Of a DNA stretch of 64,000 nucleotides, positions 1,267-64,000 are shown piece after piece. The translations under genes and the position numbers were made by a program. The notes below the pieces were generated by a model. The model had not been told where the DNA came from, did not search any database, and was given only the letters and a program-made list of their open reading frames with translations. Location of the stretch: assembly GCF_006345805.1 (NCBI RefSeq), contig NC_042997.1, forward strand, positions 76,570,001 through 76,634,000, given 5' to 3'. Numbering within the stretch: position 1 is the stretch's first letter; every line of letters begins with the position of its first letter. The stretch is from Octopus sinensis (Eukaryota).

Positions 1267-1310
1267 GACACCTGATGAAGGCTGGAGGGTATATCAGCCG
1301 AAACGTATTA
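1267..1310 (+). ncRNA. Hammerhead ribozyme-like motif (degenerate) in Penelope pLTR; more decayed mirror copy at 200-245 minus
   Basis: CTGATGA (1272-1278), helix II GGCTG/CAGCC, then GAAACGT. Helix I partner appears deleted. Confidence 0.6.
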
Positions 1311-4580: not shown

Positions 4581-5160
4581 TACTGTCCTTGAGAGAATCC
4601 ATCCATCTCAGCAGAATTGAGGTTCTGTCAAGCCTTCTCCCACAACTCATCTATTTTTTTTACTTCCTGCTATACTGAACTTATATCTTGTGCATCAAAC
4701 TTATTCCCTATCTCTAATCATCAATCACACTATTTTCACTCAGTGCACTTCCTATTCTGCCTCATATTCATGTTGTACCTGGATCTCATATCTCTTTCTT
4801 TCTCTCTCTCTTTTTCTTTCTCACTTTCCAGGTGGGTAAGCCATATATTCACCTCTTCAGCAAGCGATCTGCTTCTCTCCTTCTTTAATTTCTTTCTCTA
4901 GTCTGTAGCCCTCTAACTTGAGGGGTTTTATTATGTGGGTACTTGGCAGCCTCAATGGCGTTAATGTCATGCCAAGATCACCCAGTATACTTTAAGTGGT
5001 TGGCATTAAGAAGAGCATCCAACTGTAGAAACCATGCCAAGGCAGACATAAAACTCAGTGGAACCCTCTGTTCTTATCAAACCATTCAGTTCATGCCAGC
5101 ATGAAAAAAGGGATGTTATATGATGATGATTCCACTGCTTCTGCCAATGCTGATGACGGC

Positions 5161-7854: not shown

Positions 7855-9235
7855 GTTGTTGGATCAGGTAATTAAAGTCACGGAGAGAGTCATAGCCTAA
7901 CTAATTAGGGAGAGAATTAATTTAGACAAGATGCAGTTTGGGTTTGTGCCAGGGAAAAGCACCACTGGTAAGACAGCTGCAGGAGAAATACCTAGACAAA
8001 GATAAACCTCTGTACTTGGCTTTTGTTGACATGGAGAAAGCCTTTGACAGAGTTCCCTGATCCCTTATCTGGTGGTCAATGAGGAAACTAGGGATAGATG
8101 AATGGTTAATGAGAGCCGTGCAAGCCATGTACAGGGATGCTGTCAGTAAGGTGAAGGTTGACAACAAGTATAGTGAAGAATTCTGGGTAGGGGTAGGGGT
8201 CCAACAGAGGAATTCAAGACAGGATGCCCCTGGGAGCTACTCTATTATTCTAATAGCTGAGTCACTATCAGAACTAGTTTCAAGTGTGAAAGCAAGGTCT
8301 AGAATCAAAGGGCCTTAGAGTCAATCTAGCTAAAACCAAAGTCCTAATAAGTAGGAAGGCAGGCAAACCACAAATCCCTTCAGGTAGTTGGCCCTGCTCG
8401 ACATGTAGAAAAGGCATATGTAGAAACTCCATAAGATGTATCTGGTGTAAGCTATGGACACATAAGAGGTGCAGCAATATCAATGGAAGGCTTACTGGGA
8501 AGATAGTTTTTGTGTGTGGCAAATGCTCAGGAATAATAAACCCTGAAAATGTGTAGAAAACAGCTTCTGTCACATGCCAGGGGAAAAAAACTAGAAGTAG
8601 TTGATAGCTTCCATTACCTAGGTGACCAAGTCAGTAGCGGGAGTGGATGATCTGAGTGTGTAGCTACTAGAATAAGAATTACCTGGGCAAAGGTCAGAGA
8701 GCTCCAACCTCTGCTGGTGACAAAGGGCCTCTCACTCAGACTAAAAGGTAGACTGTATGATGCATATGTGTGAACAGCCATGCTACACAGCAGTGAAACA
8801 TGGGCTGTGACTGCTGAGGACATGTGTAAGCTTGCAAGAAATGAAGCTAGTATGCTCTGCTGGATGTGTAATGTCAGTGTGCATACACATCAGAGTGTAA
8901 GTGCCCTGAGAGAAATGTTGGACATAAGAAGCATCAGATGTAGTGTGCAAGAGAGATGACTACACTGGTATGGTCATGTGTTGCATATGGATGAGCACCA
9001 TTCAAGCATGGTCGATGCCAGTACTGCCTGACTGGCCTTTCTGCTGGTGGCACGTAAAAAGCACCCACTACACTCTTGAGTGATTGGTGTTAGGAAGAGT
9101 ATCCAGCTGTAGAGACCTTGTCAGATCTGATTGAAGCCTGGTACAGCTTTCTGGCTTGCCAGTCCTCAGTCAAACTGTCCAACCTAAGCCAGCATGGAAA
9201 GCAGACATTAAACAATGACGATGATGATGATGATT
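7855..9235 (+). mobile_element. RTE LINE, 5'-truncated with internal deletions and (GAT)n tail
   Basis: MQFGFVPGKST, LYLAFVDMEKAFDRVP, RKLGIDEWLMRAVQAMY, the Cys-rich insert GRWPCSTCRKG, and the shared RTE 3' tail ending in (GAT)n. Confidence 0.85.
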
Positions 9236-13182: not shown

Positions 13183-14366
13183 TTTAGGCATCACGCTTTG
13201 TTGGACATGTCAAGAGTCCTGTATCTTGACCCTGGCCGAAGCAGCAATTGTTGGGTTATTTTTAGAAATGTTGTAAATATCCTTTGTCAGATATTTTTAT
13301 ATTTTTATATTTCAATTGTCATCATCATCATTGTCAGCACCTTAATTATTGTTGCTAGTGGTGATTGTGGTGGCAATAGAACTTTTAACCCTAAATAAGA
13401 TAATTTTCCTGCTATCTTCATCTTGATCACCTTTAGTATTGTTGTTGTTGTTAGTGGTCATGGTCGTAGCAGTGGAAGTAATACCTCTAAGTATTATTAT
13501 TATTGCTTATTTAGCTTGGGTTCGAATTTATCAATAAAATTCTTTTCTCTGATTCTCCTCTCGATTTCACTTGGGCTGTGTAATTTGTAGAACGGAAATA
13601 TTATATACATTTTCCGGCCACATGTTGCTAGGTGGTTACTCAAAGGTATCTGACGGACCTCTGGGTCTCTAATCTGTTGCCGGTGTACACGTGAGCGTTC
13701 TAATAGTGCGTTTCCCATCTGACCTACATATATTTCTTCACAATTTGGGCATTTGATGCAGTAAATTAAATTTCTGCTTTTGCAGTTCATATTCGCGTTT
13801 GTGAATATTTCCCGGTTTTTGTGTTTATATATTGACCGGTATGTATGAATTGGCATGTGCCACATCGGCTATCATTGCATTTAGATACCGTGAATGTTTG
13901 GTCTTTGTTGCTGAGGTCAAATTTTGCCTTTGTTAGTAATGTTTTCAAGTTTTTAGGCTGTCTTTTACTAAGCACCATAGCTTGATCCGAGATTATGTCT
14001 TTTAATTCATTACTTTGGGCAATGATTGGTAGGTTTGCTTTGGCAATGTTGAAGATATTCTGGTGACATGGGTTGTGTGTCACTATGAATGGTATGACTT
14101 GTTCTTGTTTTCCTCTTCCTTGGGTTGTCCTAAGTTGTTGTATGGGTATTTTTATAGCCCGCTGTATGCCATTTTCTATAAGTAGAGATGGGTATTTTTG
14201 TTTGAGCAAAAATTCTCTTAGTTCTATTAGGCGTTTGTTCCTGATATTTGCATCTTCTACAATGGTACAAATTCTTCTGGCTAGGCAGTATGGGATGTTA
14301 CGTTTTGTATGTGGTGGATGGCACGACTTAAAATTTAGGTATTGGTGTGTGTCTGTGTGTTTATAG

Positions 14367-14397
<31 letters not shown>

Positions 14398-14400
14398 TGG

Positions 14401-14560
14401 GGAGACTTCTTTCAGTTTCCATCAACCAAATCCACTGATGTGGCTTTGGTCAGCCCAAGGGTATAGCAGAAGACACGTGCTGAATGTGCCAAGGAATGGG
14501 ATTGAACCCAAAACCATGTGGTTGGGAACGAAGCTTCGTAGCACACAGCCACGCCCGTGA
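14401..14560 (-). mobile_element. tRNA-derived SINE, 5' half
   Basis: Reverse complement of the SINE head and core at 2322. Confidence 0.75.
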
Positions 14561-16834: not shown

Positions 16835-17239
16835 GACATGCACACACAAGGAGGCAGAGGTGCACACATATACAAACACACGCTCAAACACACACATACA
16901 TAGAAAATACACAAACACAGGCATGCAAGCACATGAATATGCAGGATACATACAGATGCACACATATGCATATATACATGCATATATACATATGCATACA
17001 CACTCATTTATACATTCATACACATGCATACATACATACACACATACATACATGTATGTGCAGAAACAAACAAAAAGGAACACAGTGTAAATAACAGACA
17101 GAGTCAAGACTATTGAAAAGGTTGAAAGGCGCAATGAAAATTTTAGGAAAATAAAAATAAGAAATAAGTGGAAATTTTACCGGTAAGTGTGCTACATTAT
17201 AAGGCACAAGAAGAAAATTACTCTCCTCAGACACAACAG

Positions 17240-17274
<35 letters not shown>

Positions 17275-17310
17275 ATATATATATATGTATATATATATAT
17301 GTATATATAT
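16500..17310. repeat. Compound degenerate (CA)/(TA)/(TG) microsatellite block
   Basis: Low-complexity sequence; source of the H/T/C/V/Y-rich spurious ORFs. Confidence 0.9.
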
Positions 17311-17595
17311 CATCATCATCATCGATTAACATCTGCATTCCATGCTAGCATGAGTTGGACGATTTGACTGAGGTCTGGCGAACCAGATGGCTGCACCAAG
17401 CTCCAATCTGATCTGGCAGAGTTTCTACAGCTGGATGCCCTTCTTAACGTCAACTACTCTGACAGTGTAGTGGGTGCTTTTATGTGCCACCAGCACGAGA
17501 GCCAGTCAGGCGGTACTGGCAACGACCATGCTCAAATAGTGCTTTTTATGTGTCACCTGCACAGGAGCCAGTCCAGCGGTACTGGCAATGACCTC
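17310..17595 (-). mobile_element. RTE-type 3' tail
   Basis: (CAT)n, then the same tail seen at 9000-9235 and 38200-38433, reversed. Ends abruptly at the GC-rich array. Confidence 0.8.
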
Positions 17596-20060
17596 ATTAA
17601 GGGGTAGTAGCCGGCAGGGGCATGTCTCCGGTATTGGTCGGCATGATGCCGGAGACGTCAGCCTAAGACGCCGTCAGCCTGGCAGGTGGCTGTCGCCTTC
17701 ACGCCACCTTTCTTTCCCCATTTGTTGATGCTCCGCGGGGCCGCCAGTGGCTGGCCTCTGCCAGTTGCCCAGTGCTCTGCCACGCTACCATGCCCGATAT
17801 CGTAAGAACGAACCAAAGCTCGCAGTGTCACCCACGTACACGTGGACGGATCTGCGACTGATGCCGGAAGGCTGTCACGAAATATACGCAGTAAATACAG
17901 CGACGTGGTCCGTCCCGTAATTCCCTTAAGACAACTACTGTGTCTGCCGCGCTACCTTGTCTGATATCATAAGAAACGAACTGAAGCTTGCGGTATCGCC
18001 CAGACTATATTAAGGGGTAGCAGCCGGCAGGTGCATGTCTCCGGTATCGGACGGCACGATGCCGGAGACATCAGCCAAAGACGCCGTCAGCCCAGCGGGT
18101 GGCTGCCGCCTTCACGCCACCTTGTTTTCCCCATTCATCTACACGCTGCGGGGCCGCCAGTGGCAGGTCTGTGCCGGTCGCCCGGTGCTCCGCCACGCTA
18201 CTGTGCCTGATATCGAAAAAACAGGAACCGAAGCTTGCGGTATCGCCCACGTACACATGGACGTACCCGTGACCGATGCCGGAAGGCTGTCATGAGATAC
18301 AAGCGGTCGATACAGTGACGTGGTCCGTCCCGTAAATTCCCTTAAGACAACTACGGTGTCTGCCGTGCTACTGTGCCCGATATCGTAAAAAACGAACCGA
18401 AGCTCTCGGTGTCGCCCACGTACACGTGGATGTAGCTGCGAGGCTGTCATGAAGTCAATACAGCGACTTGGTCCGACCCGTCAATTCACGCATAAACTTA
18501 TGAGTGAACTTATGGGTCGGACCACGCTGGATAGTCACGCTCTAGGTGACTGTCGCACCCCAAGTGGGCCCAGACTATATTAAGGGGTAGCAGCTGGCAG
18601 GTGCATGTCTCCGGTATCGGTCGGCATGATGCCGGAAACGTCAGCCCGGCGGGTGGCCGCCGCCTTCACGCCACCATGCTTTCCCAGTTTGTCTACACGC
18701 CGTGGGGCCACCCGGTGCTCCGCCGTGCTACCGTGCCCGATATCGTACGAATGATCCGAAGCTCGCAGTGTCGCCGACGTACACGTGAATGTACCCGCAA
18801 CCGATGCCAGAACGCTGTCATGGTCCGTTTCGTAAATTCCCTTAACACAACTACGGTGTCCACCGTGCTACCGTGCCTGATATCGTAAGAATGAACCGAA
18901 GCTCTCGGTGTGGCCCACTATACTAAGGGGTAGCAGCTGGCAGGTGCATGTCTCTGGTATCGGTCGGTACGATGCCGGAGACGTCAGCCAAAGATGCCAT
19001 CAGCTCGGCAGGTGGCCACCGCCTTCATGCCAACTTGCTTTCCCTGTTTGGCTGCGCACCACAGGGCCGCCAGTGGCAGGCCTGCGCTGGTCGCCCAGTG
19101 CTACGCCATGCTACTGTGCCCGATATCAAAAGAATGAACCCCCATGTACATGTGGACATACCCGCGACCGATGCCGGAAGGCTGTCACAAGATACAAGCA
19201 GTCAATACAGCAACATGGTCTGTCCCGTAAATTCCCTTAAGACAACTATGGTGTCCGCCGCGCTACCATGCCCGATATCATAAAAAATGAACTGAAGCTC
19301 GAGGTGTCACCCATGTACACGTGGACTACCCGTGACCGATGCTGGAAGGCTGTCACGAGATACATGCAGTCGATACAGCAAAGTGGTCTGTCCCGTAAAT
19401 CCCCTTAAGACAACTGCGGTGTCCGCCGCCTTCCGTTTCCGGCTAGCATAAGCACCGGGGCACCAGTGGCAGTCGCCCATAGCTCTGCCATGCTACCGTG
19501 CCGAATATCTTAAGAACGAACCGAAGCTCGCGGTCTCACCCAAGTACACGTGAACGTAGCCGCGACCGATGCCATCAGTCGCTGGAAGGCTGTGGCGATA
19601 TGCACTGGGTAAATACAGCGACGTGGTCGACCCGTAAATTTACGCAAACATACCCATGAACTTACAGGTTGGACCAGGCTGGATAGTCATGCTCTAGGTG
19701 ACCATCGCACCCCAAGGGGTTCCAGACTACTATGTAGGGTTGTGGTTGATCAGCATAGGTGACCGTCTGGAAGGGATGTTCTTGTCGTTCCTTTCTGCTA
19801 ATGGTTAGCTCTCTGTTTGCCGGTGCACGGCTGGCGCATCCCCGAATCTCCGCCGTCACACCGCCCGCCTTTCAGATGCTGTGTTCGCTCACCTTTTGAC
19901 CCCTGCATTTGCCCGCGTTCACCCGCCTTTTGACGCCCGCCTTCGCCTGCCTCTTGACGTCTGCCTTCGCTCGCTCGTATGTAGGGTTGTTGCTGATCGG
20001 TATAGGGATGTTCTTGTCGCTCCTTTCTGCCAACGGTTAGCTCCCCGCTTGCCGGTGCAA
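17596..20060 (+). repeat. GC/CpG-rich hierarchical tandem array of unknown origin
   Basis: Four units start at (A)T/CTAAGGGGTAG (17596, 18009, 18579, 18922). Nine copies of a GATATC-centred submodule. Two copies of a second unit start at TATGTAGGGTTG (19731, 19978). Confidence 0.9.
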
Positions 20061-20069
20061 GATCGACTC

Positions 20070-22150
20070 TACACAGCTGGCAACACCTGCCCCTTCATCA
20101 TCAACACCACTTCTATCACTGGTTCTAACCAACAAACTGTGTTTATCAGAAATTCCTTCACTTGCACTTCTAGCCTCATCTACTGCATTAAATGCAACCT
20201 TTGTGGGAAGCTTTATGTAAGTCAGATGGGCTGCCGACTGGCTGACCGGTTCACCAAACATCTAAGTGATGTTTGTCTACGTTCCAACACTCCTGTCGCC
20301 CATCACTTCCACTTGGCCAACCATTCCTCGTCTAACATCTCCGTCTTTGGCCTTGCTCTACACTATGGATCCCCACAATCAAAACTCCACTTGGAACAGC
20401 GCTATATCTTCAATTTACAGACTACTATCCCCCACGGACTTAACACAATCCCCTCCTCCTAGTGACTGCCACTACACCTCCCACAACAAGCAACTTTATT
20501 TCTTTTCTCATTTTTCATTTCTTACTTGTAATTGCGTCTTTTATATTGGATTAACTTCCTTATATTTTATTGTTTTTATAATTTTTTGTTTTTTTATTGT
20601 TTATAATTTAGCGTTTTTAGAAATTATTGGTTTTATTTCTATATACATGCACACATACACACATTCTTACGTATCCATGAATGCACATATACCTCCCACA
20701 CACCACAGACATACAACATACATACATGCATATATACACACATACTTCCACACGAATGCACATATACCTCCCACACACAACACACATACAACATACATAC
20801 ATGCATGCACATATACACACATGCACACACCCACATATACCCACGCGCACACACATGCATGTACACACACACATACACATGCACGGGAATGCACAGATAC
20901 CTATCCCACACAACCACATGCACACAGACACACACATACAATTGTACACAGAACCACATACAGACATACTCAAGCACAGACGCATACACACAAGAAAATG
21001 CACACATAACCTGACACATCTCCACATTCAAACACACATATACACATGTACATACGCACACACACACTAGCACAGGTTCACACATATACCTCCAACAAAC
21101 AATACACATACAGACATGCACACAATTATACATACATGGGCACAAACACATACGCACATACATGCACGTAAGCACACACACACAAGCACATGCACGCACA
21201 TACGAACAGGTACACACATTACGCCTACACAAACCCCTCACACACAACTTGCGCACACACACAAATTCATATACACACCTATACATATACATACACACAC
21301 AAACATGCGCACACATATGCATGCACACACGCACATGAATGCACACACCTAACACTCACAACACCATGCATACATGTATATTCACCCACATATGCATACA
21401 CGCACACACATACACATGCACACATACATGCACACACAACTACACGCACATACGACATGCATACACACGCATGCACAAACAAATGAACCCACACATTCCT
21501 CCCATACACACAGCACATACTCATACACACACACAATTATACATACATGTATACACACATACGCATATACAAGCACACACAAACACACACATGCATGCAT
21601 ATGCAAACAAAGCACACAAGCAATATATATACATACATGCACACACACATACTTCAAACTACTAGTACCTTCCACTGACCATTGTCCTATGCACATGGGT
21701 AGGTAGAGACACAACAAGAGCCACTCCTACTATCATTCTTCCTATGACCTTAAACAATACTAAGCCCAACCACACACATAGATTGACAGCCACACACACG
21801 TGCTATCATTATACACACACACACACACACAGACCTGTGCGCATGCACATATCCACACATACACACATACCTCCTTTTTTTGTACTCTCCTGTCTTTGAA
21901 AGAACATTTTCTTCACCCATTTCCTTCCGGTCATTCAATATGTGACCACGTGTGTATTGTTGGCAATTTTTTTTCCTCCCTCTTCCCTTCCTTGGATCTT
22001 TCCTTTTCCTATGTTTCTGACAAAGAGCTCTGCTCAAAATGTTAAATCCTCCTTCTTTCTTTCCTTTCCTGAGCGTCCAATAACATTATACTTGTTCCAT
22101 GTCCCCATGTTATTGTCTTTTCTCTTTGTGTTTCATGTTTGGATTAACTA
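20070..22150 (+). mobile_element. Penelope-like element, 5'-truncated at the linker: GIY-YIG, ~1-kb CA-rich low-complexity 3' region, hammerhead-bearing terminus
   Basis: NSFTCTSSLIYCIKCNLCGKLYVSQMGCRLADRF.KH...EQRYIFNL..PHGLN, stop at 20462. Related to the 62695 copy. The link between the ORF and the terminus at ~21930-22150 is inferred. Confidence 0.75.
22013..22047 (+). ncRNA. Decayed minimal hammerhead motif
   Basis: GTTT, CTGACAA, aGAGC tct GCTC, AAAA, TG, TT, AAAT. Three CpG-type transitions restore CTGACGA..GAAACGTT. Confidence 0.6.
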
Positions 22151-27718: not shown

Positions 27719-27863
27719 TTGCAGCCTCGAATGTTTCATGTAGCTGTTAATACTCGGAATTATATGCTGTTGATAGGAGGCCGGACTATAGATAGATCAC
27801 CAATTAAAGATATTCTTTTGTATCATTTTAAATGCAATACATGGCAGAACATTTCCTTCAAAG
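27719..27863 (+). CDS. MEGF8: MEGF8-like exon B (kelch; LQPRMFHVAVNTRNYMLLIGGRTIDRSPIKDILLYHFKCNTWQNISFK)
   Basis: TTTTCATTCAG acceptor; AAAG/GTAATC donor; phase 0 in, 1 out, compatible with exons A and C. Matches MEGF8 PRPRLFHA..MVVLGGR..DVLLYQVNCNAW. Confidence 0.9.
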
Positions 27864-28379: not shown

Positions 28380-29400
28380 GAACAGTATCATTATCTTTAT
28401 CAGTCACCTGTCTTCTGTGCTGGCATGGATTTGATGGTTTGACAGGATCCAACAGGTCAGAAGATTGCATTGTACTGAGCTCCAAGTCAGTTTTGGCATG
28501 GTTTCCACAGCTGGATGCCTTTCCTAATACCAACAACAGAGTGTACTGGGTGCCTTTTTGTGTTACCAACTAGGTAACTTGCAAGATAAGATCCTCTCAA
28601 CTTAGTGAGGGTGTAGTATTGAGGGAGGTGGCTTAATGCCAAGTGTTGAGAGGTAAAAGTATGATAGGAAGATAGGAACAGGCGACTTGCTGTCGAAGAG
28701 ATACATAGCTACCCCAGCTGGATAGGGGAAGTGAAAGTTGCTGGTGTCAGGATATGCACTCAAAACATAAAAAGGTGATTATATACAGAAGAACAGGAGT
28801 GGTAGGCAGATAAGTTTGCAAGAGTGTGAGGAGAATGATAGATGGTTAGATGTGGAGACATAGGTGAATGCAGTGAATGGCAAACAGTGGAGGATGGTCA
28901 ATGATAAATATCAGTTTAGGAGGGAAGATGATGGAAATAAGAGGGGGTCAAGGAGGAGGAGGAGAAGGCAGGTGGCAGTACAGAATAAGGTAGGTGGAGA
29001 GCAACATTATAACAGAATTGTGTAGGTGAAAATTAGGGGGATGATGTGAAGTGTGGATGGGAAAGGAGAATACACACTAACAGGGGTGAAGATCAGAGAT
29101 AGATTTGAGAGAGCAACAAACAATAGGGGGGGTGATGGCTGATATGAGGTGTTTAATGGAAAATACAGTAGTTAGGGATAATATTGAGAATGCAGGGTGG
29201 GTGACAAGGGGAGGTGGCTCCAAAAAGTGGGGAAAATGGTTGTATTAATGAGGGATGAAATATGTGTCTCTGTTTTCATATGATTACAGTAGCTGGGTAA
29301 ATAATGCTGTAGTTAGAAGAGTGGTGGGTATTGGGAGGATGAATTACGAAGAAGGCTTGACAGGCTTTGGACAAAATTATGGAAATCCAACTTTTTATTT
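28380..29400 (-). mobile_element. LINE-type 3' tail with a long purine-rich (plus strand) extension; related block at ~61190-61860
   Basis: Shared GAGGGAGGTGGCTT..ATACATAGCTAC segment next to an RTE-like tail. Confidence 0.5.
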
Positions 29401-36269: not shown

Positions 36270-39200
36270 TCTTTTCTGCTGTTACAGCAGAATTTTGCTG
36301 TCCTTTCCCCCTTGTTTTAAGGAGAAAACTGCTAGAAACATGAATACGTCACCAATTTCTTCATGTTCGAGGAAAACTTTGAAATTTTGTATCAAGGCAT
36401 AGAGAGGAGTATTAGGGAGGAGAGCGGTAAAGATATAGAGGCGTTGCACATGCTCGCTACAAAGGCAGACAATAAAATGTCTAGTGAGGCTACACAAGCA
36501 GAAAAGTCTAGAGTTAATTTTGCGCGTGCAGCAACTTGCTCCAGTGAAAATATTGAAATAAGCAAGGATGATTAAAAAAAATATCAAAGTTTACTACAAA
36601 AGGAAGGTGAAAATGTAAACTTGCTCCCTCCCAGTGAATTAATCAACATGATGGAGAGAAAAACACTAATATAACCATGTCAAAAATAGAAAAAGTGATG
36701 AGGGAAGCCATAGAGAAATGCTTGAGGCCGATATGGCAACAAACAAGGAGTAGTCGCTTCAGCACTGTAGAGGTACGTTACCCTAGCGAAGAAAAAGCCA
36801 GGGAACATTCGACAATGACATTGAAGTCGGAAGAGGTCTCCTGCCTACTTACTTAGGAAGGAGAACTTCAAAAGTCAGGGTCAGTGATATACCACCTGAA
36901 ATAGATGTGGCCTGGCTGGTAGCCACTAACCTCATGGGCAGAGAGGAAAAAAATTACCATTCTACAGACGAAGAGATACCACCACATGAACTGGGTCAGA
37001 CAAGCCTTAGAGCTTGTTCAAGCAAACCCCATCGATTTAGAAGAAATGCTCAGCTCAAAACCAAAGTCCTAATAAGTAGGAAGGCAGGCAAACCACAAAT
37101 CCCTTCAGGTAGATGGCCCTGCTTGATCTGAAGTAGAGGCGTAGGTAGAAACTCTATAAGATGTACCCAGTGTAAGCTATGGATAAATAAGAGGTGCAGC
37201 AATGTCAAAGGAAGGCTAACTAGGAAGATAGTTTTTGTATGTGGCAGATGCTCGGGAGCAATAAACACTGAAAATGCGCAGAGACCAACTTCCGCCACAT
37301 TCCAGGGAGAAAAACTAGAAGTGGTTGATAGCTTCTGTTGCCTAGGTGACCAAGTCAGTAGCGGAGGAGGGTGCACTGAAAATGTAGCTGCTAGAATAAG
37401 AATAGCTTGGGCAAAGTTCAGAGAGCTCTTACCTCTGCTGGTGACAAGGGGTCTCTCGCTTAGAGTAAAAGGTAAACTGTATGACGCTTGTGTATGAACA
37501 GCCATGCTACATAGCAGTGAAACGTGGGCTGTGACTGCTGAGGACATGCGTAAGCTCACAAGGAATGAAACCAGTATGATCTGATGGATGTGTAATGTCA
37601 GTGTTCATACTCGACAGAGTGTAAGTACCTTGAGAGAAAAGTTGGACCTAAGAAGCATTAGATGTGGTGTGCAAGTAAGACGACTGCGCTGGTATGGTCA
37701 TGTGGCGAGAATGGATGAGGTTAGCTGTTTGAAAAAGTGCCACACCCTGGCAGTTGAGGGAACTTGTGGAAGAGGTAGACCCAGGAAGATCTGGGATGAA
37801 GTGGTGAAGCGCGACCTTTGAACATTAGGCTTCACCAAGGAAATGACTAGCGATTGAGCCTTTTGGAAATATTCTGTGGTTGAGAAGACCTGGCAAGCCA
37901 AGTGAGACCATAGCCTGTGACCTATGCCAGGAGCATAACTAGCCCACTTATGCGTACCTTTTCCTTCTTTGGTCACTAAACTCTGCTTGCGAAGACCTGT
38001 TAAGGCAAGTGAAACCAAAATCAAATTCGACGACTGGCATCTGTGCTAGCGGAGTGCAAAGAGTACCATACGAGGGTGATCGTTGACAGAGTGGCTAACC
38101 GGCTTCCGTGCCAGTAGCACATAAAAGGGCACCGTTCGAGTGTGATCGTTACCAGCGTCACCTTACTGGCACCTGTGCTGGTGGCATGTGTAAAAAAATT
38201 TGAGCAAGGTCATTGCCAGTACTGCCTGACTGGCCCTGTGCCGGTGGCACATAAAAAGCACCCACTACACTCTCGGAGTGGTTGGCGTTAGGAAGGGCAT
38301 CCAGCTGTAGAAACTCTGTCAGATCAAGATTGGAGCCTGGTGCAGATGTCTGGTTCGCCAGCCCTCAGTCAAAATTGTCCAACCCATGCTAGCATGGAAG
38401 GCGGACGTGAAACGATGATGATGATGATGATGAATTATAATTGGGGAAGATACCAGCCTGATGGTGGTGGTTGGGGGGCAAAAGCCGAAGTGCTGTAAAT
38501 GTGGCGAGAAAGGCCACATAAGGTCAAACTGTAAGAAGAAAGACACAGTCAAAGGAAACACAGCGGAAAAGGCAAGCATGCCACTGAAGGCAACGACCAC
38601 ACTGCTAGAAATACCAGCCACATCACGTGCACAAAGTACCAAAGTATAGCTGACAGCGCGAGAAAACAACAACCAGGAGTGGGTCACCATGATACCTTCA
38701 AAAATAAGATGGAAATGAAAAGACTCCCAGCTTCGGATATACAGGACTATGCTCCGAGAGTTACAAGCACACCCACAGCTGCAAACACACACATAGCCAA
38801 AAAACACACACACTGGAAAAAGCACACACAAACACACAGACACCTACCACAAGCACACACACACACACACCTACAAACACCCATGCATCTACAAACACAC
38901 CCACAAGCACACACACACACACCCTTCCACAATCACCTAATAAAAAAAAGAGAAACAACTTCACGGTAATAAACAAAAATAACAAACTCTTAAGAGACCA
39001 AATCCTTTTAATGAAGTCAGCAAACAATATATCGCAACAGATTTACATAGTACAATTCTTGCAAATGTTGAATTTTATACCAACGACAACACAGACTATT
39101 TTGAACTAAAAGAATCTTTTGTAGAGGACATCGGCCTGATACAGATGAACTTTTTGAGCCATCTGTACAGGCAATTCTCTAAAAAAATGACCTCGCAAAC

Positions 39201-43180: not shown

Positions 43181-43436
43181 ATCCTGAAATGAATGATTAC
43201 CTTCGTAACTACTTTGGTGCTGCAGCCACTACAGTTGACAAAGATTTTTATATAATGGGTGGCTATAATGGTGTGGAAAGTGGGAAATTAATGAGAATAA
43301 ATCTTCCTGATGATACGTGCACCCTTATATATGACTATGAGACTTGTAAGAGTACTGATGGCTGTTCTGCATGTAAGTTAGAAACTGTATACAACTTGAC
43401 ATACTGTGTTTCTACTGAAGGTAGATTTCCTGATAT
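43181..43436 (+). CDS. MEGF8: MEGF8-like exon C (last kelch plus start of PSI; DPEMNDYLRNYFGAAATTVDKDFYIMGGYNGVESGKLMRINLPDDTCTLIY...GRFPD)
   Basis: TATTTTCTAG acceptor; AT/GTAAGT donor at 43437; phase 1 in, 2 out. Matches MEGF8 LYISGGFGGVALGRLLALTLPPDPC. Confidence 0.9.
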
Positions 43437-46800: not shown

Positions 46801-47058
46801 TTATTATTATTATTGATTTGCACCTTTACAGGTGCCAGTGCCATGAAAATACACTTGTATTGGTGCTATGTATATGCACTTGTGCCAGTGGCACATAAAA
46901 AAGTACCCAGCATACTCTGTAAAGTGGTTGGCATTAGGAAGGGCATCCAACCATAGAAACCATGCCACAACAGACAATTGGAGTCTGGACAGCTCCTGTC
47001 AAACAGTCTAACCCATACCAGCATGGAAAACAGTGATGATGATGATGATGACAACGAC

Positions 47059-47336: not shown

Positions 47337-50300
47337 CAGTAGTTTTATTTTTATAGCGTGCTTTCACTTCACTACCGAGCGCAGCTCTGTGTGCCTTGGG
47401 TATGTGCTGTGATTTGTTGTGATGCTCTGATGGTTATTGTATGGAAAGTGTTCTGCGTAGGATGTGTGCAGTGCCTAGTAGTGCAATTTTCTGTATTTTA
47501 TATGTGTTTGTAAGTCCTGGTGTTTTTGTTATGTATTTGTCTGAATGTTTTTTTATCATGCCTAATGCACCTACTATGATAGGAATTGTTTCTGTTTTCA
47601 GGTTCCTCATTCTAGTTACCTCTATTTCCAGGTCTTTGTATTTTGAGAGTTTCTCCATTTCTTTTAGAGACACGTTGTCATCTGCCGGTATTGATACATC
47701 AATTAGAAAGCATTTTTTTCCTTCATGATCTCTGACAACTATATCTGGTCTGTTGGCCTTAATTTCTCTATCTGTGTGTATCGGCATATCCCAGAGTATG
47801 GTTGCTTTCTCGTTTTCTGTGACCTTTTCTGGTGTGTGCCTATACCATCTTTTTTCTGTTGTTATTCCATAATGTTGGCATAGCTTCCAATGTATGTAGG
47901 TTCCAACTCTGTCACGTCTGTGAATATATTCCTTCTTAGCCAGGACTGGGCAGCTAGAGATAATATGATTTATTGTTTCTTGTCCATCTCCACATATTCT
48001 GCAGTTACTTGTAATATTTCTTTTCATTACAGGTTTTTGGTAATTTCTGGTGGGGAGGCTTTGGTCTTGTGCTGCAATTAAAAATCCCTCTGTTTCTGCT
48101 TTGAGTCCTGAGCTTCTCAACCATTGCTGGGATTTTTCTTTGTCTATTTCTTTTGCGTTTAGTTTAGTGCAGTATTTACCATGAAGGGGCTTTTCTTGCC
48201 ATCGTTTTATCATGGCTCGTTGCTGTTCTATTTTTAGTTTGGATTTCATTTGTTTTATAGCTTTTGTTGTTTCTTCATCATCTTCTTCTTCTTCTTTGTG
48301 TTTATTAGGTGGTATGATTTCTTGTTTGTATTTGTCAGCTTCCTTAAATACTGAGAACAGTTTTTTGTTTTGCTCGTGTTTTGCTGCTATCTGGATCAGT
48401 TTTCCTTCCTTCTGAAGTAGGTATTTTTGCAGTCCTATGGTGGTTATTTTATAGTAGTTTTCCAGCTGTATAAGGCCTCTACCACCTTCTATACGTTGTA
48501 TATATAGTCTTTCTATGTCAGATTTTGGGTGATGCATCCTAGATCCTGTCAGTATTTTTCTTGTTTTCCTATCTATTTTGGACAGTTCATTTCGTGTCCA
48601 GTTAAGGATATTGTAGCTGTAACTTATAACTGGGACAGCTAAAGTGTTGATACCTATTATCTTGTTTTTAGCATTGAGCTCTGTTTTTAGTATTGATCTA
48701 ACTCGTCTATAATATTCTTTTTTTATTTTCTCTTTCATTTGTGTGTGTTGTGTCTTATCTAGTTCATGGATTCCTAAGTATTTGTAAGTTTGGCTTTGGT
48801 CTAATTCTTTTATTTCATTGGTTTTATCTAGTGTGATGTTGTTACTCTTAACTAGTTTTCCTCTTTTCATGGTTACTTTGGCGCATTTTTCTAATCCAAA
48901 TTTCATATCTATTTCTTTGGTAAATCCACGAACTGTCTTTAATAGTGTTTCCAGCTGTTTGTCATTTGCAGCGTATAGTTTTAGGTCATCCATATATAAA
49001 AGGTGGCTGATCGTTTTGCCGTAACATTTATATCCACATCCAGTTCTATTTAGCATATCAGATAGAGGTGACAGTGCCAAGCAGAAAAGGAGTGGAGAGA
49101 GCGTGTCTCCCTGGAATATTCCTCTTCTAATGGGGATGTCTTTGGTTTTCACGAGTCCCTCTTTTGTTTGGAGGTGTAGGACTGTTTGCCATTTATTCAT
49201 AGAGTGCTCTATGAATTTTATGATTGTTGGTGCTACTTTGTTAATGGCTAGTGTTTCGAGGATCCATGTGTGGGGGATGCTGTCAAACGCCTTTTTGTAG
49301 TCAATCCAGGCCATACTGAGGCCTTTCTTCTTTCTGTGGCTGTCTTCAGTTACGGCTTTATTAATCATTAGTTGATCTTTACAGCCATATGAGCCCTTGC
49401 GGCATCCTTTCTGCTCTTCTGGGAACAGTTTGTTTTCGTCCAGGTGCTTGTTCAGCCTTTGCGTTATCACTGCAGTAAATGCCTTGAACATAGTAGGGAG
49501 GCAGGTTATTGGTATGTAGTTTTTCTGGTTTTGTTGTTTCATTTGATTTGGGAATTAAGATGGTTTTCCCCTTCGTGAGCCATTCAGGCATTGTCTCTGG
49601 CTCTGCTAGTATGCTGTTAAAGTTTTCAGCCAGCTTTTTGTGCATTCCTGTTAGATATTTCAACCAGAAGTTGGGGATCTTGTCATGCCCAGGTGCCTTC
49701 CAGTTGCTTAGTCTTTGCAGTGCCTGGGTGACCTCTTCAGTTGTTATGGGGGTCCAAAGTTGTTCAGATGCCGAGTTTGTTATTTTCATACTCCTTTTTT
49801 TTGGCTGTTCGTTCGCCGACCATATTTCTTTCCAGAATTCTTCCAATTCTTCTGCCGTTGGTGCTGCAGTGACTTCTATTTTATTTTTGCCCAGTTCTTG
49901 GTAGAACTTTTTGGGGTCGGAGTTGAACTTTTTGTTCTGTTCAAAGAAGCGTTGGCGTTTCTCGTACCGGCGGATCCTTTGAGCTTTGGCAAGGATATCT
50001 TGCTTCAGCTTTTCTTTTATCTCCGGCAAATCTTTTTCCGTGATGTTATATTTGCGGAGCATTTTTGTTCTCTTTTTGTTGCTCAGTAGCGTTGCTTGTT
50101 TGCTGATTTCATTAAGAATCGACAGGTCTTTTCTAATTTTTTTTATTTTGTTTTGGATGTTATTTATCCACAGGGTTTGTTTGGGTGGTGGTACTCCTGT
50201 TTGGGCGGGTTTGGGTGAGTATCCAGCTTCTTTTGTGGCTGCAGTGGCTGCTGCGTATATCAAGTCATTTAGTTCAGTGATATCACTTTTTTTTGTTTCA

Positions 50301-51300
50301 GTGGCTAGTTCAGTGACGGCTAGGTTTATGTTGTTTATAATTGGTGTTGTTATTGCGTTTATTTTTATTCTTGGGAGGTATGGTCGGTGGTCCATTTTGA
50401 GCTCTGTGGTTTTTAGTTCTTTGATTATTTTATTTTTTATATTATCATAATCATTAGGCTCCCCTTCGTTGTTTACATCGTGTTTGTTGGGAATGTTGCG
50501 TTTGTCTTCGTGTTTTACAGTTTCAGTGTTTATATTATTGGGCATTGTTGTGTGGCTTCTATCTACATTTTCCTGGTGTATTTTTTCTTTTAAATGTTCT
50601 ATTTCTATTTCTGATATTTTTTTGGCTTTGAGAATGTATCTTCGTACGTTAGCTAATTTATTAGGGTTCATTGCTGTATCCAAGTCTATACCTCTATTAT
50701 TTTCCTTCCATATTTTATATGTATGTGTTGTTGTATTTTCATTTTGTGGGTAGAGCATTGCTGTGAAGTATGCGTGTAAGATAGAAATGTATTCCTCACG
50801 TGTCCATTTACGTCTTTTGGGTTTTAATTGCGGGACATGAGGTACAACGTCCGGCCCATTATTTTGACGGTCGTCATTTTCGTAGGGTACCGGTCCGTTT
50901 ATTTCTGTTGTCACATTATTTCGCACGTGTAGTTTTTCGTACATTTTTTGTTGTAGGTTTAATGTACGTACCGCTCGATTGTTATTCTTGGGTTGAATAG
51001 TATCGGTGGCATTTAATTTCTTCGTAGTTCCTTTGTACATGGTGTTTGAGGTCGGGGATGATCGTGTTGTTCCACGCATGTTTACATGTGTTGTGTTAGA
51101 GGTGGAGATAATATCGAGTCAAAATACGTCATTTCGTTTCGAAAATAGTAATAAATTTCAATTCGTATTACTTACTCGGATATAGTCCAATTCTTTGTTA
51201 GTAAATCTTTGGCTCCATAGGGTGTCCTTGTTTTCGATGTTTGTGGATAGATTTCGGAGCTCTGTATTTTCCTTCTTACATCTTAAACGTCCCCGGTGTC
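47337..51300 (-). mobile_element. Near full-length R4/Dong-clade non-LTR retrotransposon in a (TAA)n microsatellite
   Basis: Myb-like RRKWTREEY, RT (QGDTLSPLLF, YMDDLKLY), CCHC CRICG..ETINHIISSC, REL NRPDIVV..IDVSIP..EKLSKY. (TAA)n at both flanks. Confidence 0.95.
47434..51079 (-). pseudogene. R4/Dong single ORF broken by a +1 frameshift at the T5 run 49520-49524
   Basis: ORFs 49379-51079 and 47434-49542 overlap. Deleting one base restores KPENY.PITCLPT. Confidence 0.85.
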
Positions 51301-58149: not shown

Positions 58150-58279
58150 ATGTTTTGGTGGAAATGTAAGTGAAGGGAAAATGTGTGATCACAAGTGGTT
58201 TGAGGCAAGAAGCTGTAACAAATACAAAACATGTGATCAATGCCTGGCTATTTATCCAGAATTCAAGAAAATATCTCAG
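58150..58279 (+). CDS. MEGF8: MEGF8-like exon D (CFGGNVSEGKMCDHKWFEARSCNKYKTCDQCLAIYPEFKKISQ)
   Basis: TTATAG acceptor (phase 2, completes ATA with exon C); CAG/GTTAGT donor at 58280. Matches MEGF8 C..LRTCSECLA.HP. Confidence 0.85.
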
Positions 58280-58884: not shown

Positions 58885-59086
58885 GTTTGCAAATGGTGCA
58901 AGCATTGTAAAGTTGGTAAATGTATTCACCAAAAACAGGAATGTGGTGCCCAAAATCCCTGTAATCGATCACAGGCTGAATTTCTTGATATGTCTGACTG
59001 TGATGGTATTGTGTGCAAAGCTGTAAATTGCCGTTCATGCCACAGCTCAAAGAATTGCATGTGGACAAGACAAGTGACACGCACTG
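58885..59086 (+). CDS. MEGF8: MEGF8-like exon E (PSI; VCKWCKHCKVGKCIHQKQECGAQNPC...CKAVNCRSCHSSKNCMWTRQVTRTG)
   Basis: TTTTTTCTTCAG acceptor; ACTG/GTAAGT donor at 59087. Strong match to MEGF8 CKWCTNC..G.CI...CMWTRQFKRTG. The five exons total 900 nt with consistent phases. Confidence 0.92.
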
Positions 59087-60376
59087 GTAAGTTGAATTTT
59101 AATGTTATTGATTTTCTGAACAAGAAATAGGAAGGATTAATTTGAATACATAATGTATAAAAAAAAGATGAAAGATTAATTCAATACAAAATGCACAAAA
59201 CCACTTAAGCACATAGGTTTATCAATTCTTTGGTTAAGAGAGGGAGAAACAGGGTTGTTATGTTCAAAACTTTACACACATGAAAATGCAAGTACCAATT
59301 TCTGAAAAAAAAAAAAACAAAGTCTTTTTATCAATTAACAATATACAGTTAGCACAAATCATACAGTATGCATCATGAAAGAAATATTGTTTGCTTCCTT
59401 TCAGTTATTTTGTTTATATCTTTGCCAGCAAGGTGTTAGCTCAGTATTTAGTATTGCCACCCTGTTTAGGTGTGTTTGACTTTAGGTTGTACTCCTCATA
59501 TATGTCTTTATACATTTGAGAACACTGAAGAGGATTCTGTAGAATATGATGTAGTAGGAATGGTTGTCAATATACCATCAAAACATTGTTCTAATATCTT
59601 GTCATGGTTTATCTCTTAGAAGATAAAATCCAAGGAAAGACTTCCTGATTTCCCCTTTAGTTATGAATCTGAGGCATTGCAACTTACTCAACTTTGCTGA
59701 TGCCTAACATATTGTCGACAATAATGGAATATTCTGAACACTTTTTCATATAATTTGTTGTGCTGTCTATTATGAATTTCATATTAGACAATAGGTGTAC
59801 TTGGTTGATTTTTCACTTTTGTCTTAGGAAGGACTATCCTGGGAGTAAAGATGTGTAAGTTCTAAAAAGTTACTATGGTTAATATTTGAAATTTCTCAGT
59901 TGCTGTGCATGAATATTTGGCAGGGGTAACAATGAAGTTTGATACTTGATAATGTTGTAGTTAAGTGAAGGATAAAGTTAATGCTTTTGAAATTTCTAAA
60001 ATTCAACTTCTTACCATCCAATTTCAGTGATGTTGTCCTATAGATTCCTGGGTTACATTCACTTCTTTGTTATTTTTATCAGTTTTCATCAGTTGTCATT
60101 TTCATCACATATTTCCAGATCCAGAGGAGCCTGGTTATGTATAGATTTAATTTTTACTGTGAACATAACAGTTCTTGGCAATAGTTTGGAAAACCCTGCT
60201 CTTATAATTATTATTCTTTTTTTTTATCTTAAGATAAAAGCTATGGATGACCTGATAGCTGCAGAAGACACTTGTCTAAGGTGCCATGCAGTGGTACCAA
60301 ACTGAAGATCACTTGGTTGGGGAGCAAGTTTCTTAACCACACAGCTATGTTTACATCTATGTACATTTATATATAT

Positions 60377-61193: not shown

Positions 61194-61869
61194 TCATCAT
61201 CATCATCATTTAACATCCATTTTCCATGCTGGCATGAGTTTGATAGTTTGACAGGAGCTGGCAAGCCAGAGAACTGTGTCAAGCTCTACTGTCAACTTTA
61301 GCAAGATTTCTGTGATTGGATGCTCTTCCTAATGCCAACCACTTTACAGATTGTACAAATTGCTTTTTATGTGGCACCAGCACCATCAAGTTCACCAAGT
61401 AATTTGCAAAGGCCTATTAACTGAGAGGGTGAGTGATATTGAGGGAGGTGGCTTTGTGCCAGATGATGTGAAGTTAAACTAGGATAGAGGAAATACATAG
61501 CTACTCCTGTTGGAAAGAGTGAGAGAGAGGTGGTGGTGGTGATATACCTGGCCATACCCTCAAGGTACAAGGAAGTGAATGTAAGTGGTACTGAGAATTG
61601 GACAGGGTGAGTGAACAGGGAGTTCAGAAGAGTGCAAAAAGAGAGTGGGAGAGAGGGGAGGAGAAGGAATATTGTGAGTGGTGAACACAGATATATAGGA
61701 GACCAGCAGATCAAAAATGATACAGTTGGCAGAAACAGGACAGGAGAAATAGATAACAAAGTAGTGTTGGGTTGCAGAAGCATTGGGTGTAGAAACAAGC
61801 ATAGTGCATAAGGAAATGTAGTTTGGGTACGAGTGTGAATTAATATTACATGTAAGCGGAGAGCACATA

Positions 61870-62339: not shown

Positions 62340-62695
62340 TCTAATTCCTGTGTGATCTTAGTGTTTATTGCTCCTGAACATCTGTGACATACAAAGACAC
62401 CCTTACATCTCTTATGTGTCCATAGTATTTACTGGGTGCATGAAATTTCATTGAAATTCCACTACACGTCTTTGTATATATGAAGGATTGCTGCAAAGTT
62501 TCTGGCTTTAAAAGTATCATGAAAGGCCTGGCTGGAGGTCCAACATTTCGAGTTCTATTACAGGGCTTGGAAAAACTGAAGGACCACTGCAATAAGTGTG
62601 TGAATCTGAGAGGGGAATATGTTGAATAAAATCATAATTAACTGATCCTCCTGTATTTTCTGTTACCCAAATCCAGATATTTTTCAGCACCCCAC
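62340..62695 (+). mobile_element. mariner 3' remnant
   Basis: DHCNKCVNLRGEYVE* C-terminus followed by a TIR-like end. Confidence 0.55.
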
Positions 62696-63760: not shown

Positions 63761-64000
63761 ACCCTCCTCCTCTCTTCCTCCCACCCACCTCTCCTCTCTT
63801 GCTCTGGCACCTACTTCCTCTCTTCACTCCTACTCACCTCCCTTCCACCCTCTCCCTTCATCATCACTCCTCCCTTTTTACTCCATCCTACACATTCCAA
63901 CCCCACCATCCCTATACATCCCATCCCACTCCACCCCATCCCTTAGACCCCACTCTTGCTTCGCCAACTCTCGCCTCCCCCACACCCCAACACCACCACA

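What the first reader, a model, noticed from the sequence alone, without database searches (positions are those of the whole stretch)
17596..20060. Unexplained 2.5-kb GC-rich hierarchical array in a MEGF8 intron
Seen: units start at 17596, 18009, 18579 and 18922 (413, 570, 343 and ~810 bp). They are built from a head module A, a ~140-170-bp submodule B (GATATC at 17796, 17963, 18209, 18379, 18739, 18879, 19122, 19274; variant at 19503; often followed by the palindrome CCACGTACACGTGG), and a closing module C (~18490-18578, ~19645-19730). Two copies of a different unit D follow (19731, 19978). Layout: A-B-B / A-B-B-C / A-b-b / A-B-B-B-C / D / D(truncated). There is no recognisable ORF, and composition differs sharply from the host. 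Inference: an imported regulatory or structured-RNA array rather than a simple satellite. This is the strongest candidate here for an undescribed element.
Basis: partly seen in the sequence, partly recalled or inferred. Interest (0 to 1): 0.8.

Follow-up and report, generated by a model that had tools for sequence, protein, structure and literature searches.

The report
CpG-rich tandem array with Penelope tail
A 2.5-kb GC- and CpG-rich block of nested tandem repeats in an intron of an attractin/MEGF8-type gene is real, but it shows no RNA structure, coding capacity or foreign origin; it is most simply a transposon-borne repeat array fused to the tail of a Penelope-like retroelement, which is an ordinary kind of thing from a family I could not match to anything.

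Summary
Positions 17596-20059 are a hierarchical repeat with the stated unit starts, GATATC sites and C and D modules. GC is 0.57 against 0.38 for the window.

New findings:
1. The array is a 2.46-kb CpG island (CpG o/e 1.0 against 0.36) and holds 24% of the window's CpGs.
2. The likely base unit is about 570 bp (A-B-B'-C). B is a roughly 168-bp sub-repeat. Three of the five units are deletion variants.
3. The truncated second D unit is joined directly at 20059/20060 to a 5'-truncated Penelope-like element (endonuclease ORF plus 3' UTR, 20060 to about 20555).
4. The left edge abuts a truncated SINE-like retroposon and a (TA)n microsatellite. No array sequence lies beyond either neighbour.
5. 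The structured-RNA reading is not supported: no Rfam hit, no hammerhead core, no compensatory pairs, and only one of two C copies folds unusually.
6. There is no coding signal, and no viral, bacterial, plasmid or metagenomic relative. The host lineage is absent from the searchable collections, so other copies could not be examined.

Best reading (about 0.45): a promoter-like monomer array carried in as one composite insertion with the Penelope tail. Main rival: an independent satDNA-like or rolling-circle-type array with later insertions at its edges. Interest is low to moderate.

The parts
17596..18008 (.). Unit 1: A head, one B sub-repeat, and a partial B ending at GCCCA
   Evidence: A1 aligned with A2-A4. 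One search shows the unit end. It is 83.7% identical to unit 2 over 410 bp.
18009..18578 (.). Unit 2: the only undeleted A-B-B'-C unit (about 570 bp) and the likely base unit
18579..18921 (.). Unit 3: A with two internal deletions, a shortened B, and a partial B
   Evidence: One search shows the gaps in A3. Searches show the B parts.
18922..19424 (.). Unit 4: A-B-B. The two B copies are 90% identical and are the youngest duplication in the array.
   Evidence: (19141-19261 against 19310-19429, 90%).
19425..19730 (.). Unit 5: the 3' half of A, then B, then C
   Evidence: One search aligns the partial A to the 3' halves of A1, A2 and A4. family D12, gives the C copy at 19646-19729.
19731..19977 (.). 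D1: a full 247-bp D unit, with a 24-bp minisatellite at 19911-19974
   Evidence: families D13 and D15; Tandem Repeats Finder: period 24, 2.7 copies.
19978..20059 (.). D2: a D unit truncated at 20059 and joined directly to the retroelement fragment
   Evidence: After the shared string ...gccggtgca, D1 continues with D sequence. D2 continues into the endonuclease reading frame.
20060..20555 (+). 5'-truncated Penelope-like element. It keeps the C-terminal GIY-YIG/CCHH endonuclease reading frame (to the stop at 20460-20462) and the 3' UTR. The 3' end at about 20555 is approximate.
   Evidence: - One search gives the translation. The frame has only its terminal stop.
- It is 52% identical over 124 aa to the endonuclease of a second copy at 63138-63758 (E 2e-36).
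- It is 32% identical to a third copy.
- There is a weak hit to TIGR01453, the GIY-YIG homing endonucleases (E 0.037).
- The motif definition comes from PMC8557442.
18037..18069 (.). Hairpin-forming palindrome in the A head (12-13 bp stem). It is present in all four full A copies.
   Evidence: inverted repeat I2; columns 40-72. Changes are one-sided only, with no compensatory change.
18469..18524 (.). Inverted repeat of C1 (27-nt arms, 85% complementary). The 3' arm is an inverted copy of the B tail.
   Evidence: inverted repeat I6. One search gives z = -6.4 and -6.2 on the two strands. The second C copy does not keep the fold.
17309..17595 (-). Neighbour: a SINE-like retroposon copy with an (ATC)n end and 66-bp tandem units. 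It is cut off where the array starts.
   Evidence: Other copies in the window share the (ATC)n end and differ in length at the other end.

Best explanation
The array is the non-coding 5' part of one composite insertion. The 3' part of that insertion is the tail of a Penelope-like retroelement (PLE).

Shown:
- There are five copies of a roughly 570-bp unit A-B-B'-C, two with C and three deleted, followed by 1.3 copies of a 247-bp unit D.
- The truncated D2 is joined at 20059/20060 to a 5'-truncated PLE endonuclease ORF and its 3' UTR.
- No array sequence reappears beyond the PLE fragment or beyond the SINE-like copy on the left.
- The block sits between microsatellites.
- It is a CpG island in a CpG-depleted intron.

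Inferred:
- In its source, the array was tandem promoter-type 'monomer' DNA that was kept largely unmethylated.
- An RNA started in or upstream of an A head and ended at the PLE 3' end. This could have been a read-through or chimeric transcript, or the transcript of an internally deleted, non-autonomous PLE derivative.
- PLE reverse transcriptase/endonuclease copied this RNA into a microsatellite-rich site by target-primed reverse transcription.
- The 5' end of the copy therefore falls at a unit boundary.
- A SINE-like retroposon later landed at the left junction.
- In its present place the array is a passenger. It is slowly losing CpGs and need have no function for the host gene.
For: - The junction of D2 with the endonuclease frame is seen directly.
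- The PLE identity of 20060-20462 rests, and on the CCHH-within-GIY-YIG definition in PMC8557442.
- No copy of any array module lies outside 17596-20059 in the window, and in particular none lies beyond the PLE piece or the SINE. So neither neighbour is a simple insertion into a larger array.
- The edges are sharp, from 200-bp windows.
- CpG o/e is 1.02 in the array and 0.98 in D, against 0.36 for the window.
- CpG columns differ only about 2-2.5 times more than other columns among copies: 33% against 13%, and 30% against 16%. This points to a largely unmethylated history or a recent arrival.
- The endonuclease frame is still open over 134 codons, while the other two frames carry 2 and 7 stops. 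This fits a fairly young insertion.
- The array starts within a few bases of a unit boundary. In mouse L1 monomer arrays such an end marks the parent's transcription start (PMC6454616).
- PLE copies are usually 5'-truncated, form complex arrangements and favour microsatellite targets (PMC8557442).
Against: - There is only one copy, so a recurrent D/endonuclease junction (a family) is not shown.
- No target-site duplication was found.
- The PLE piece has CpG o/e 0.49, unlike the array. This could mean separate histories, or only that the coding part was CpG-poor from the start.
- The SINE-like copy at the left edge is about 14% different from its best match in the window. If it landed after the array, the array is not very young, and its kept CpGs would then need protection rather than youth.
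- Promoter activity is pure inference. There is no canonical TATA box and there are no expression data.
- This genome is so rich in microsatellites that lying between them means little.
Confidence: 0.45

Rival explanations
1. This is an independent satDNA-like array, or a tandem array of a small non-autonomous element of the rolling-circle (Helitron/Helentron, HINE) type. Each roughly 570-bp unit would be one element: a 5' module with a hairpin (A), central repeats of about 168 bp (B), and a 3' module with a palindrome (C). Inner copies would be truncated at their 3' ends. The PLE and the SINE-like element would have landed at its edges later, with deletions.
For: - B is about 168 bp, inside the 140-180-bp range that dominates HINE-borne arrays in oyster (PMC7492417).
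- A has a 12-nt stem with a 9-nt loop, which resembles the 5' subTIR-plus-IR arrangement.
- C1 carries a strong palindrome.
- Units 1 and 3 lack C, like the 3'-truncated inner copies the same paper describes for tandem Helitrons.
- No target-site duplication was found.
Against: - No inverted match of 11 nt with at most one mismatch exists between unit 5' and 3' regions, so there are no subTIRs.
- There is no microsatellite in the left module.
- GC is 57%, against 31-39% in the oyster arrays.
- D units have no place in that plan.
- Two independent insertions exactly at the two edges, each with loss of whatever lay beyond, is less economical than one composite insertion.
Confidence: 0.25
2. This is a functional intronic CpG island. 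It would be an alternative promoter or enhancer cluster of the attractin/MEGF8-type gene, or of a nested non-coding transcript, kept unmethylated by selection whatever its origin.
For: - It is the only extended stretch in 64 kb that meets CpG-island criteria.
- CpG o/e is 1.0 in an intron at 0.36.
- CpG decay among copies is only about twice the background.
- CACGTG and ACGTCA cores recur in each unit.
Against: - Units differ by 13-16% at non-CpG sites, with frequent deletions. This looks like neutral drift.
- There is no GC skew.
- The motif counts are inflated by the repeat copies themselves.
- There are no expression or conservation data.
Confidence: 0.12
3. This is a displaced piece of an rDNA intergenic spacer, made of spacer-promoter copies (A) with enhancer sub-repeats (B). 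It would have been moved here by retrotransposition or recombination.
For: - The hierarchical plan of a head followed by two or three sub-repeats, the high GC and the undepleted CpG resemble spacer super-repeats. This rests on my own knowledge of Xenopus-type spacers.
Against: - There is no rRNA gene or fragment in the window.
- Nothing ties modules A-D to rDNA.
- The host rDNA could not be examined.
Confidence: 0.07
4. This is an array of structured RNAs or self-cleaving ribozyme units (a retrozyme-like circular RNA template).
For: - The A hairpin is kept in all four copies.
- C1 folds with z = -6.
- The array lies next to a PLE, the partner of animal retrozymes (10.64898/2026.07.22.740005).
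Against: - There is no Rfam match at gathering score or at E<=10.
- There is no hammerhead core string in 17596-20560.
- None of 51 predicted pairs in A is compensatory, and the covariation term is +0.19.
- The B consensus fold is only -11.5 kcal/mol.
- A, B and D have z between -3.0 and +0.8.
- The C1 fold is equally strong on both strands and is lost in C2. That marks a DNA inverted repeat, not a conserved RNA.
Confidence: 0.03
5. This is foreign DNA (viral, bacterial or symbiont) or an assembly chimera.
For: - GC and CpG are bacterial-like, and the edges are sharp.
Against: - No match in IMG/VR, JGI metagenomes or GTDB genomes by pattern or by back-translated search.
- No blastn match in phages or plasmids.
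- No protein-level relative among 1.84 billion representatives.
- Both edges are joined to host-type retroelements without gaps.
Confidence: 0.05

Closest known systems
Mouse L1Md 5'-UTR monomer arrays (PMC6454616, PMC9022269, PMC2894050)
   Same: - CpG-rich tandem units of a few hundred bp lie at the 5' side of a retroelement body that is itself CpG-poor.
- Unit number varies, and some units are truncated or deleted.
- The 5' end of a copy can mark the parent's transcription start.
   Different: - Here the units are about 570 bp with an internal 168-bp sub-repeat.
- The partner is a Penelope-like element, not L1.
- The array is joined to a truncated endonuclease domain, not to a tether and ORF1.
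- Promoter activity is untested.
SVA-type composite non-autonomous retrotransposons (my own knowledge of hominid SVA)
   Same: - A GC-rich variable tandem-repeat region is fused to a 3' piece of another retroelement.
- Such elements are mobilised in trans through that 3' end.
   Different: - Only one copy was seen.
- There is no poly(A) and no target-site duplication.
- The 3' piece is a PLE tail.
Animal non-LTR retrozymes, non-autonomous derivatives of PLE pLTRs (10.64898/2026.07.22.740005)
   Same: - They are tandem non-coding units associated with Penelope-like elements.
   Different: - No hammerhead ribozyme motif is present.
- The units are larger and heterogeneous.
- This array lies in an intron, whereas that preprint reports retrozymes excluded from introns in vertebrates.
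HINE/Helentron-borne satDNA-like arrays of oyster (PMC7492417)
   Same: - Short dispersed arrays with monomers of about 160-180 bp.
- A 5' module with a small hairpin and a 3' palindrome.
- No target-site duplication.
- Inner copies of tandem elements are 3'-truncated.
   Different: - There are no subterminal inverted repeats.
- There is no left-module microsatellite.
- GC is 57% against 31-39%.
- There is an extra D unit and a fused PLE tail.
rDNA intergenic-spacer super-repeats (spacer promoters plus enhancer repeats; my own knowledge)
   Same: - A hierarchical head-plus-sub-repeat layout.
- GC- and CpG-rich composition.
   Different: - There is no rRNA gene nearby.
- No sequence link to rDNA could be tested.

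Membership tests
Non-LTR retrozyme | Each tandem monomer carries a hammerhead ribozyme | tested here: not met
   - No hammerhead family in Rfam at E<=10 over 17000-21000.
- No core string CTGANGA...GAAA inside 17596-20560.
Non-LTR retrozyme | Sequence relationship to the pLTR of a PLE | not testable with these tools
   No full-length PLE of this family and no host genome were available.
Penelope-like element (applies to 20060-20555 only) | [quoted passage not shown] | tested here: met
   - The translation shows ...LIYCIKCNLCGKLYV... followed by the histidine pair.
- The definition is in PMC8557442.
- It is 52% identical to a second copy.
- There is a weak TIGR01453 hit.
- Pfam gave no hit, and the structure model was too poor to use (pLDDT 44).
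Penelope-like element (applies to 20060-20555 only) | Reverse transcriptase domain upstream of the endonuclease | tested here: not met
   The copy is 5'-truncated just upstream of the endonuclease. D2 sequence lies where the RT would be. It is a fragment, not a whole element.
HINE / Helentron-borne tandem-repeat element | 11-12-bp subterminal inverted repeats at the two ends of the element | tested here: not met
   No inverted 11-mer with at most one mismatch between unit 5' and 3' regions, or between the array ends.
HINE / Helentron-borne tandem-repeat element | Central array of monomers of about 140-180 bp, and a 3' palindrome | tested here: met
   B is about 168 bp. The C1 palindrome has z = -6, but it has decayed in C2.
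L1-type promoter monomer array | Tandem CpG-rich monomers directly upstream of the coding body of a full-length element, with promoter activity | tested here: inconclusive
   The CpG-rich tandem units are met. The downstream body is only a truncated endonuclease. Promoter activity cannot be tested here.
SVA-like composite retrotransposon | Many dispersed copies sharing the same internal junctions, each with its own flanks and target-site duplication | not testable with these tools
   There is one copy in the window. The host genome is not in any searchable collection. No target-site duplication was found here.
Structured RNA family | Conserved secondary structure supported by covariation or by a curated model | tested here: not met
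   Rfam; z-scores; 0/51 compensatory pairs in A; weak consensus in B.
CpG island (descriptive class) | More than 200 bp, GC at least 0.5, CpG o/e at least 0.6 | tested here: met
   Over 17596-20059, GC is 0.57 and o/e is 1.0. All 500-bp windows across it qualify.
rDNA intergenic spacer | Contiguity with, or sequence identity to, the host rDNA unit | not testable with these tools
   No rRNA in the window. The host rDNA is unavailable.

The most novel reading that the evidence does not exclude
The block is one copy of an undescribed family of composite non-autonomous retroposons. These would be driven by Penelope-like elements but lack a ribozyme. A CpG-island array of promoter monomers (A-B-B'-C units plus D) would be fused to a PLE 3' tail. 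That would be the PLE counterpart of SVA elements or of L1Md monomer promoters, and distinct from hammerhead-bearing retrozymes.
Probability: 0.2. Interest if true: 0.55.

Novelty: new member of a known kind. Interest (0 to 1): 0.25.

Why it matters
If the composite reading holds across many copies, it would show a second route, besides retrozymes, by which Penelope-like elements move non-coding passengers. It would also show that such passengers can seed CpG islands inside methylated gene bodies of an invertebrate. As a single locus, it is mainly a caution for annotation: a GC-rich 'island' in an intron here is transposon cargo, not evidence of a gene, an RNA or foreign DNA.

Tried and rejected
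RNA and structure:
- Rfam at gathering score on the whole window, and at E<=10 on 17-21 kb. Only microsatellite 'miRNA' look-alikes and a sub-threshold SECIS_2 hit appeared.
- tRNA scan: none.
- Hammerhead core pattern: none in the block.
- MFE z-scores and RNAalifold: no conserved structure.

Coding:
- Pfam on 12 array ORFs: nothing.
- phmmer of an array translation against 1.84 billion representatives: two spurious hits to repeat-containing proteins.

Search for relatives:
- Exact-pattern scans of IMG/VR, JGI metagenomes and GTDB genomes with A, B, C and D strings: nothing, apart from one chance 18-mer.
- Back-translated scans: none.
- blastn against phages and plasmids: none.
- Exact look-ups of window ORFs in the contig index: not on record.

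Host identity:
- The endonuclease ORF gave no protein hits.
- A LINE ORF gave at best 57% identity.
- Five joined host exons gave one 30% hit.
- So the host lineage is not in the collections, and its name remains unknown. My guess of a mollusc or cephalopod is untested.
- A literature search for strings of the SINE-like repeat found nothing.

Insertion features:
- Target-site duplication search: none.
- SubTIR search: none.

Endonuclease identity:
- AlphaFold model of the endonuclease piece: pLDDT 44, too poor for a fold search, so none was run.
- PDB profile search: nothing meaningful.

These were the hammerhead core (used as the pattern, with a short example hammerhead sequence in my working notes), transcription-factor site cores, and transposon terminal motifs and other short site and box consensus strings (in my working notes only).
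- The script printed stop-free pieces of a degenerate PLE copy with their coordinates, which in effect shows where its stops lie.
Full report
1. THE OBSERVATION

- The repeat finder places the A heads in register with spacings of 413, 570 and 343 bp and 85-94% identity (family D6).
- It also finds seven or eight copies of B segments, C at 18494-18577 and 19646-19729 (82%), and D at 19731 and 19978 (86-89%).
- A self-BLAST gives the same picture. Unit 1 against unit 2 is 83.7% over 410 bp, and the two B copies of unit 4 are 90% alike.
- GATATC is at exactly the eight listed positions. The exact palindrome is at 17832 and 18416, with four degenerate copies by pattern.
- GC is 0.56-0.58 against about 0.37 around it.
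- Tandem Repeats Finder reports only the 24-bp minisatellite in D1. TRF did not report the large units. They have long periods and differ by 16-31% with indels.

2. ANATOMY, REFINED

- The last 25-45 nt of A are the same sequence as the tail of B.
- The stretch between the second and third B of 'unit 4' is the 3' half of an A head. So there are five units, not four.
- Units 1 and 3 end in a partial B that stops at GCCCA. B and the end of C share this pentamer, and the next unit follows it. The simplest base unit is therefore the 570-bp A-B-B'-C of unit 2, with deletion derivatives.
- C is a B tail followed by its own inverted copy (inverted repeat I6).
- D1 is complete. D2 lacks 15 bp internally and is cut at 20059.

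3. COMPOSITION

- The array has 176 CpGs in 2135 bp (o/e 1.02), and D has o/e 0.98.
- The whole window is at 0.36, the SINE-like neighbour at 0.40 and the PLE piece at 0.49.
- The block holds 202 of the window's 851 CpGs.
- It is the only extended stretch that meets CpG-island criteria, and its edges are sharp at 200-bp resolution.
- Among copies, most variable columns are transitions, and most of those lie in CpG context.
- At sites that are CpG in some copy, 58-59% of cells are still CG.
- Pairwise difference is 13-16% at other columns and 30-33% at CpG columns. That ratio is only about two. It argues for a lineage that was mostly unmethylated, or for copies that diverged elsewhere and arrived here recently.

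4. WHAT IT IS NOT

- Not a known RNA. Rfam finds nothing at gathering score in 64 kb, and nothing credible at E<=10 in 17-21 kb. There are no tRNAs and no hammerhead core string in the block.
- Not a conserved structure. A, B and D have z-scores between -3.0 and +0.8. Only C1 is exceptional (z about -6). It is so on both strands, and C2 has lost the fold.
- RNAalifold finds 0 of 51 compensatory pairs in A with a positive covariation term. B has a consensus of only -11.5 kcal/mol.
- Not coding. Twelve ORFs have no Pfam hit. A translation has no true relative among 1.84 billion representatives.
- Not demonstrably foreign. There are no matches in viral, metagenomic, prokaryotic, phage or plasmid collections.

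5. SURROUNDINGS

Right side:
- Positions 20060-20462 are an open frame with only its terminal stop.
- It has the GIY...YIG core with two cysteines between the motifs and a histidine pair after it. This is the signature of Penelope-like endonucleases (PMC8557442).
- It is 52% identical over 124 residues to the endonuclease of a second copy at the window's end. That copy is degenerate, with at least three in-frame stops, and is 5'-truncated. A YIDD-containing piece precedes its endonuclease.
- It is 32% identical to a third copy.
- Two of these pieces weakly hit the GIY-YIG homing-endonuclease model TIGR01453.
- Homology starts at the last residues of the zinc-finger-like motif upstream of the core. 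So the copy is 5'-truncated, and D2 is joined where the reverse transcriptase would be.
- An AT-rich 3' UTR follows, and then microsatellites.

Left side:
- Positions 17309-17595 are a copy of a dispersed SINE-like repeat.
- All copies share the (ATC)n end and vary in length at the end made of 66-bp units.
- The element therefore probably reads on the minus strand here and is 5'-truncated at the array.
- To its left lies a (TA)n/(TG)n microsatellite.

Other context:
- No array module occurs anywhere else in the window.
- The host gene is on the plus strand. Three exons hit the Attractin/LZTR1 propeller profile at consecutive positions.
- Five exons have mutually consistent splice phases.
- The array lies in the roughly 26-kb intron between the first two of these exons.

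6. MECHANISM

- The block has a composition alien to the intron, so it was inserted and did not grow in place.
- The PLE fragment forms its right end, with nothing of the array beyond it. One composite insertion is therefore more economical than two insertions that each hit an edge and deleted the rest.
- I propose an RNA that began in or before an A head and ended at the PLE 3' end. PLE machinery would have copied it into a microsatellite-rich site.
- The 5' end falling at a unit boundary would then mark a transcription start, as in L1Md monomer arrays (PMC6454616).
- The joined structure, the truncations, the composition and the lack of outside copies are shown. Transcription from the array, trans-mobilisation and the order of events are inferred.
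- Confidence is about 0.45.
- Rivals, in order: an independent satDNA-like or HINE-like tandem element with later edge insertions; a selected intronic CpG island; a displaced rDNA spacer; foreign DNA or an assembly chimera; a structured RNA array.

7. COMPARISON AND NOVELTY

- It works most like L1Md monomer promoters or an SVA-type composite, but with a Penelope partner.
- It fails the defining test for retrozymes (no ribozyme) and for HINEs (no subTIRs).
- Dfam and Repbase were not available, and the host lineage is absent from the collections. The best LINE hit is 57% and the best host-exon hit is 30%.
- I therefore cannot say whether the family is already catalogued.
- I rate it a new member of a known kind (transposon-associated complex tandem repeat), of low to moderate interest.

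8. SLIPS

- I used short motif consensus strings from memory. These were the hammerhead core as the pattern, with a short example hammerhead sequence in my working notes, and transcription-factor cores. Transposon terminal motifs and other short site and box consensus strings appeared in my working notes only.
- One search printed stop-free pieces of a degenerate PLE copy with their coordinates.

Noticed in passing
17309-17595; 38098-38420(-); 8994-9230(-); 46876-47040(-); 28479-28568(+); weaker at 4979-5039 and 61317-61383: A dispersed SINE-like repeat family. One end is (ATC)n. The other end is made of 66-bp tandem units and varies in length between copies. It is probably a retroposon whose true 3' end is the simple repeat.
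   Followed up: partly
62646-63761(+), running towards the window end: A second Penelope-like copy. A YIDD-containing piece is followed by the endonuclease and then a CT-rich 3' region. It is 5'-truncated, and the reverse-transcriptase part has at least three in-frame stops. GC is 0.54 with strong C-over-G skew.
   Followed up: partly
13503-14449(-) and 522-914 (overlapping pieces on opposite strands): Two further Penelope-like remnants. The pair at 522-914 consists of endonuclease pieces in inverted orientation, the arrangement described for PLE insertions.
   Followed up: no
1272-1303(+): A hammerhead-core-like string with a possible 5-bp helix II lies about 350 bp downstream of the inverted PLE pieces. 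Rfam at E<=1 finds nothing there.
   Followed up: partly
47437-51118(-): A LINE with long open frames (706 and 579 aa). Its best database relatives are only 57% identical. The few hits that carry a name come from a coral, a shrimp and a louse. The family is therefore widespread, and the host lineage is unsampled.
   Followed up: partly
~1675-1842, ~27719-27863, ~43217-43435, ~58150-58279, ~58885-59087 (+): Five exons of an attractin/MEGF8-type gene with mutually consistent splice phases. The introns are 14-26 kb long and filled with retroelements and microsatellites.
   Followed up: partly
20646-20822: A 75-bp tandem repeat (2.2 copies) built of ACAT-rich microsatellite lies just downstream of the PLE 3' UTR. 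It leads into about 1.3 kb of AC-rich, strongly skewed simple sequence.
   Followed up: no
19054-19106(+): A sub-threshold Rfam SECIS_2 match (25.6 bits against a gathering score of 70; E 0.07) inside the A head of unit 4. It is not present in the other A copies' hit list and is treated as chance.
   Followed up: no
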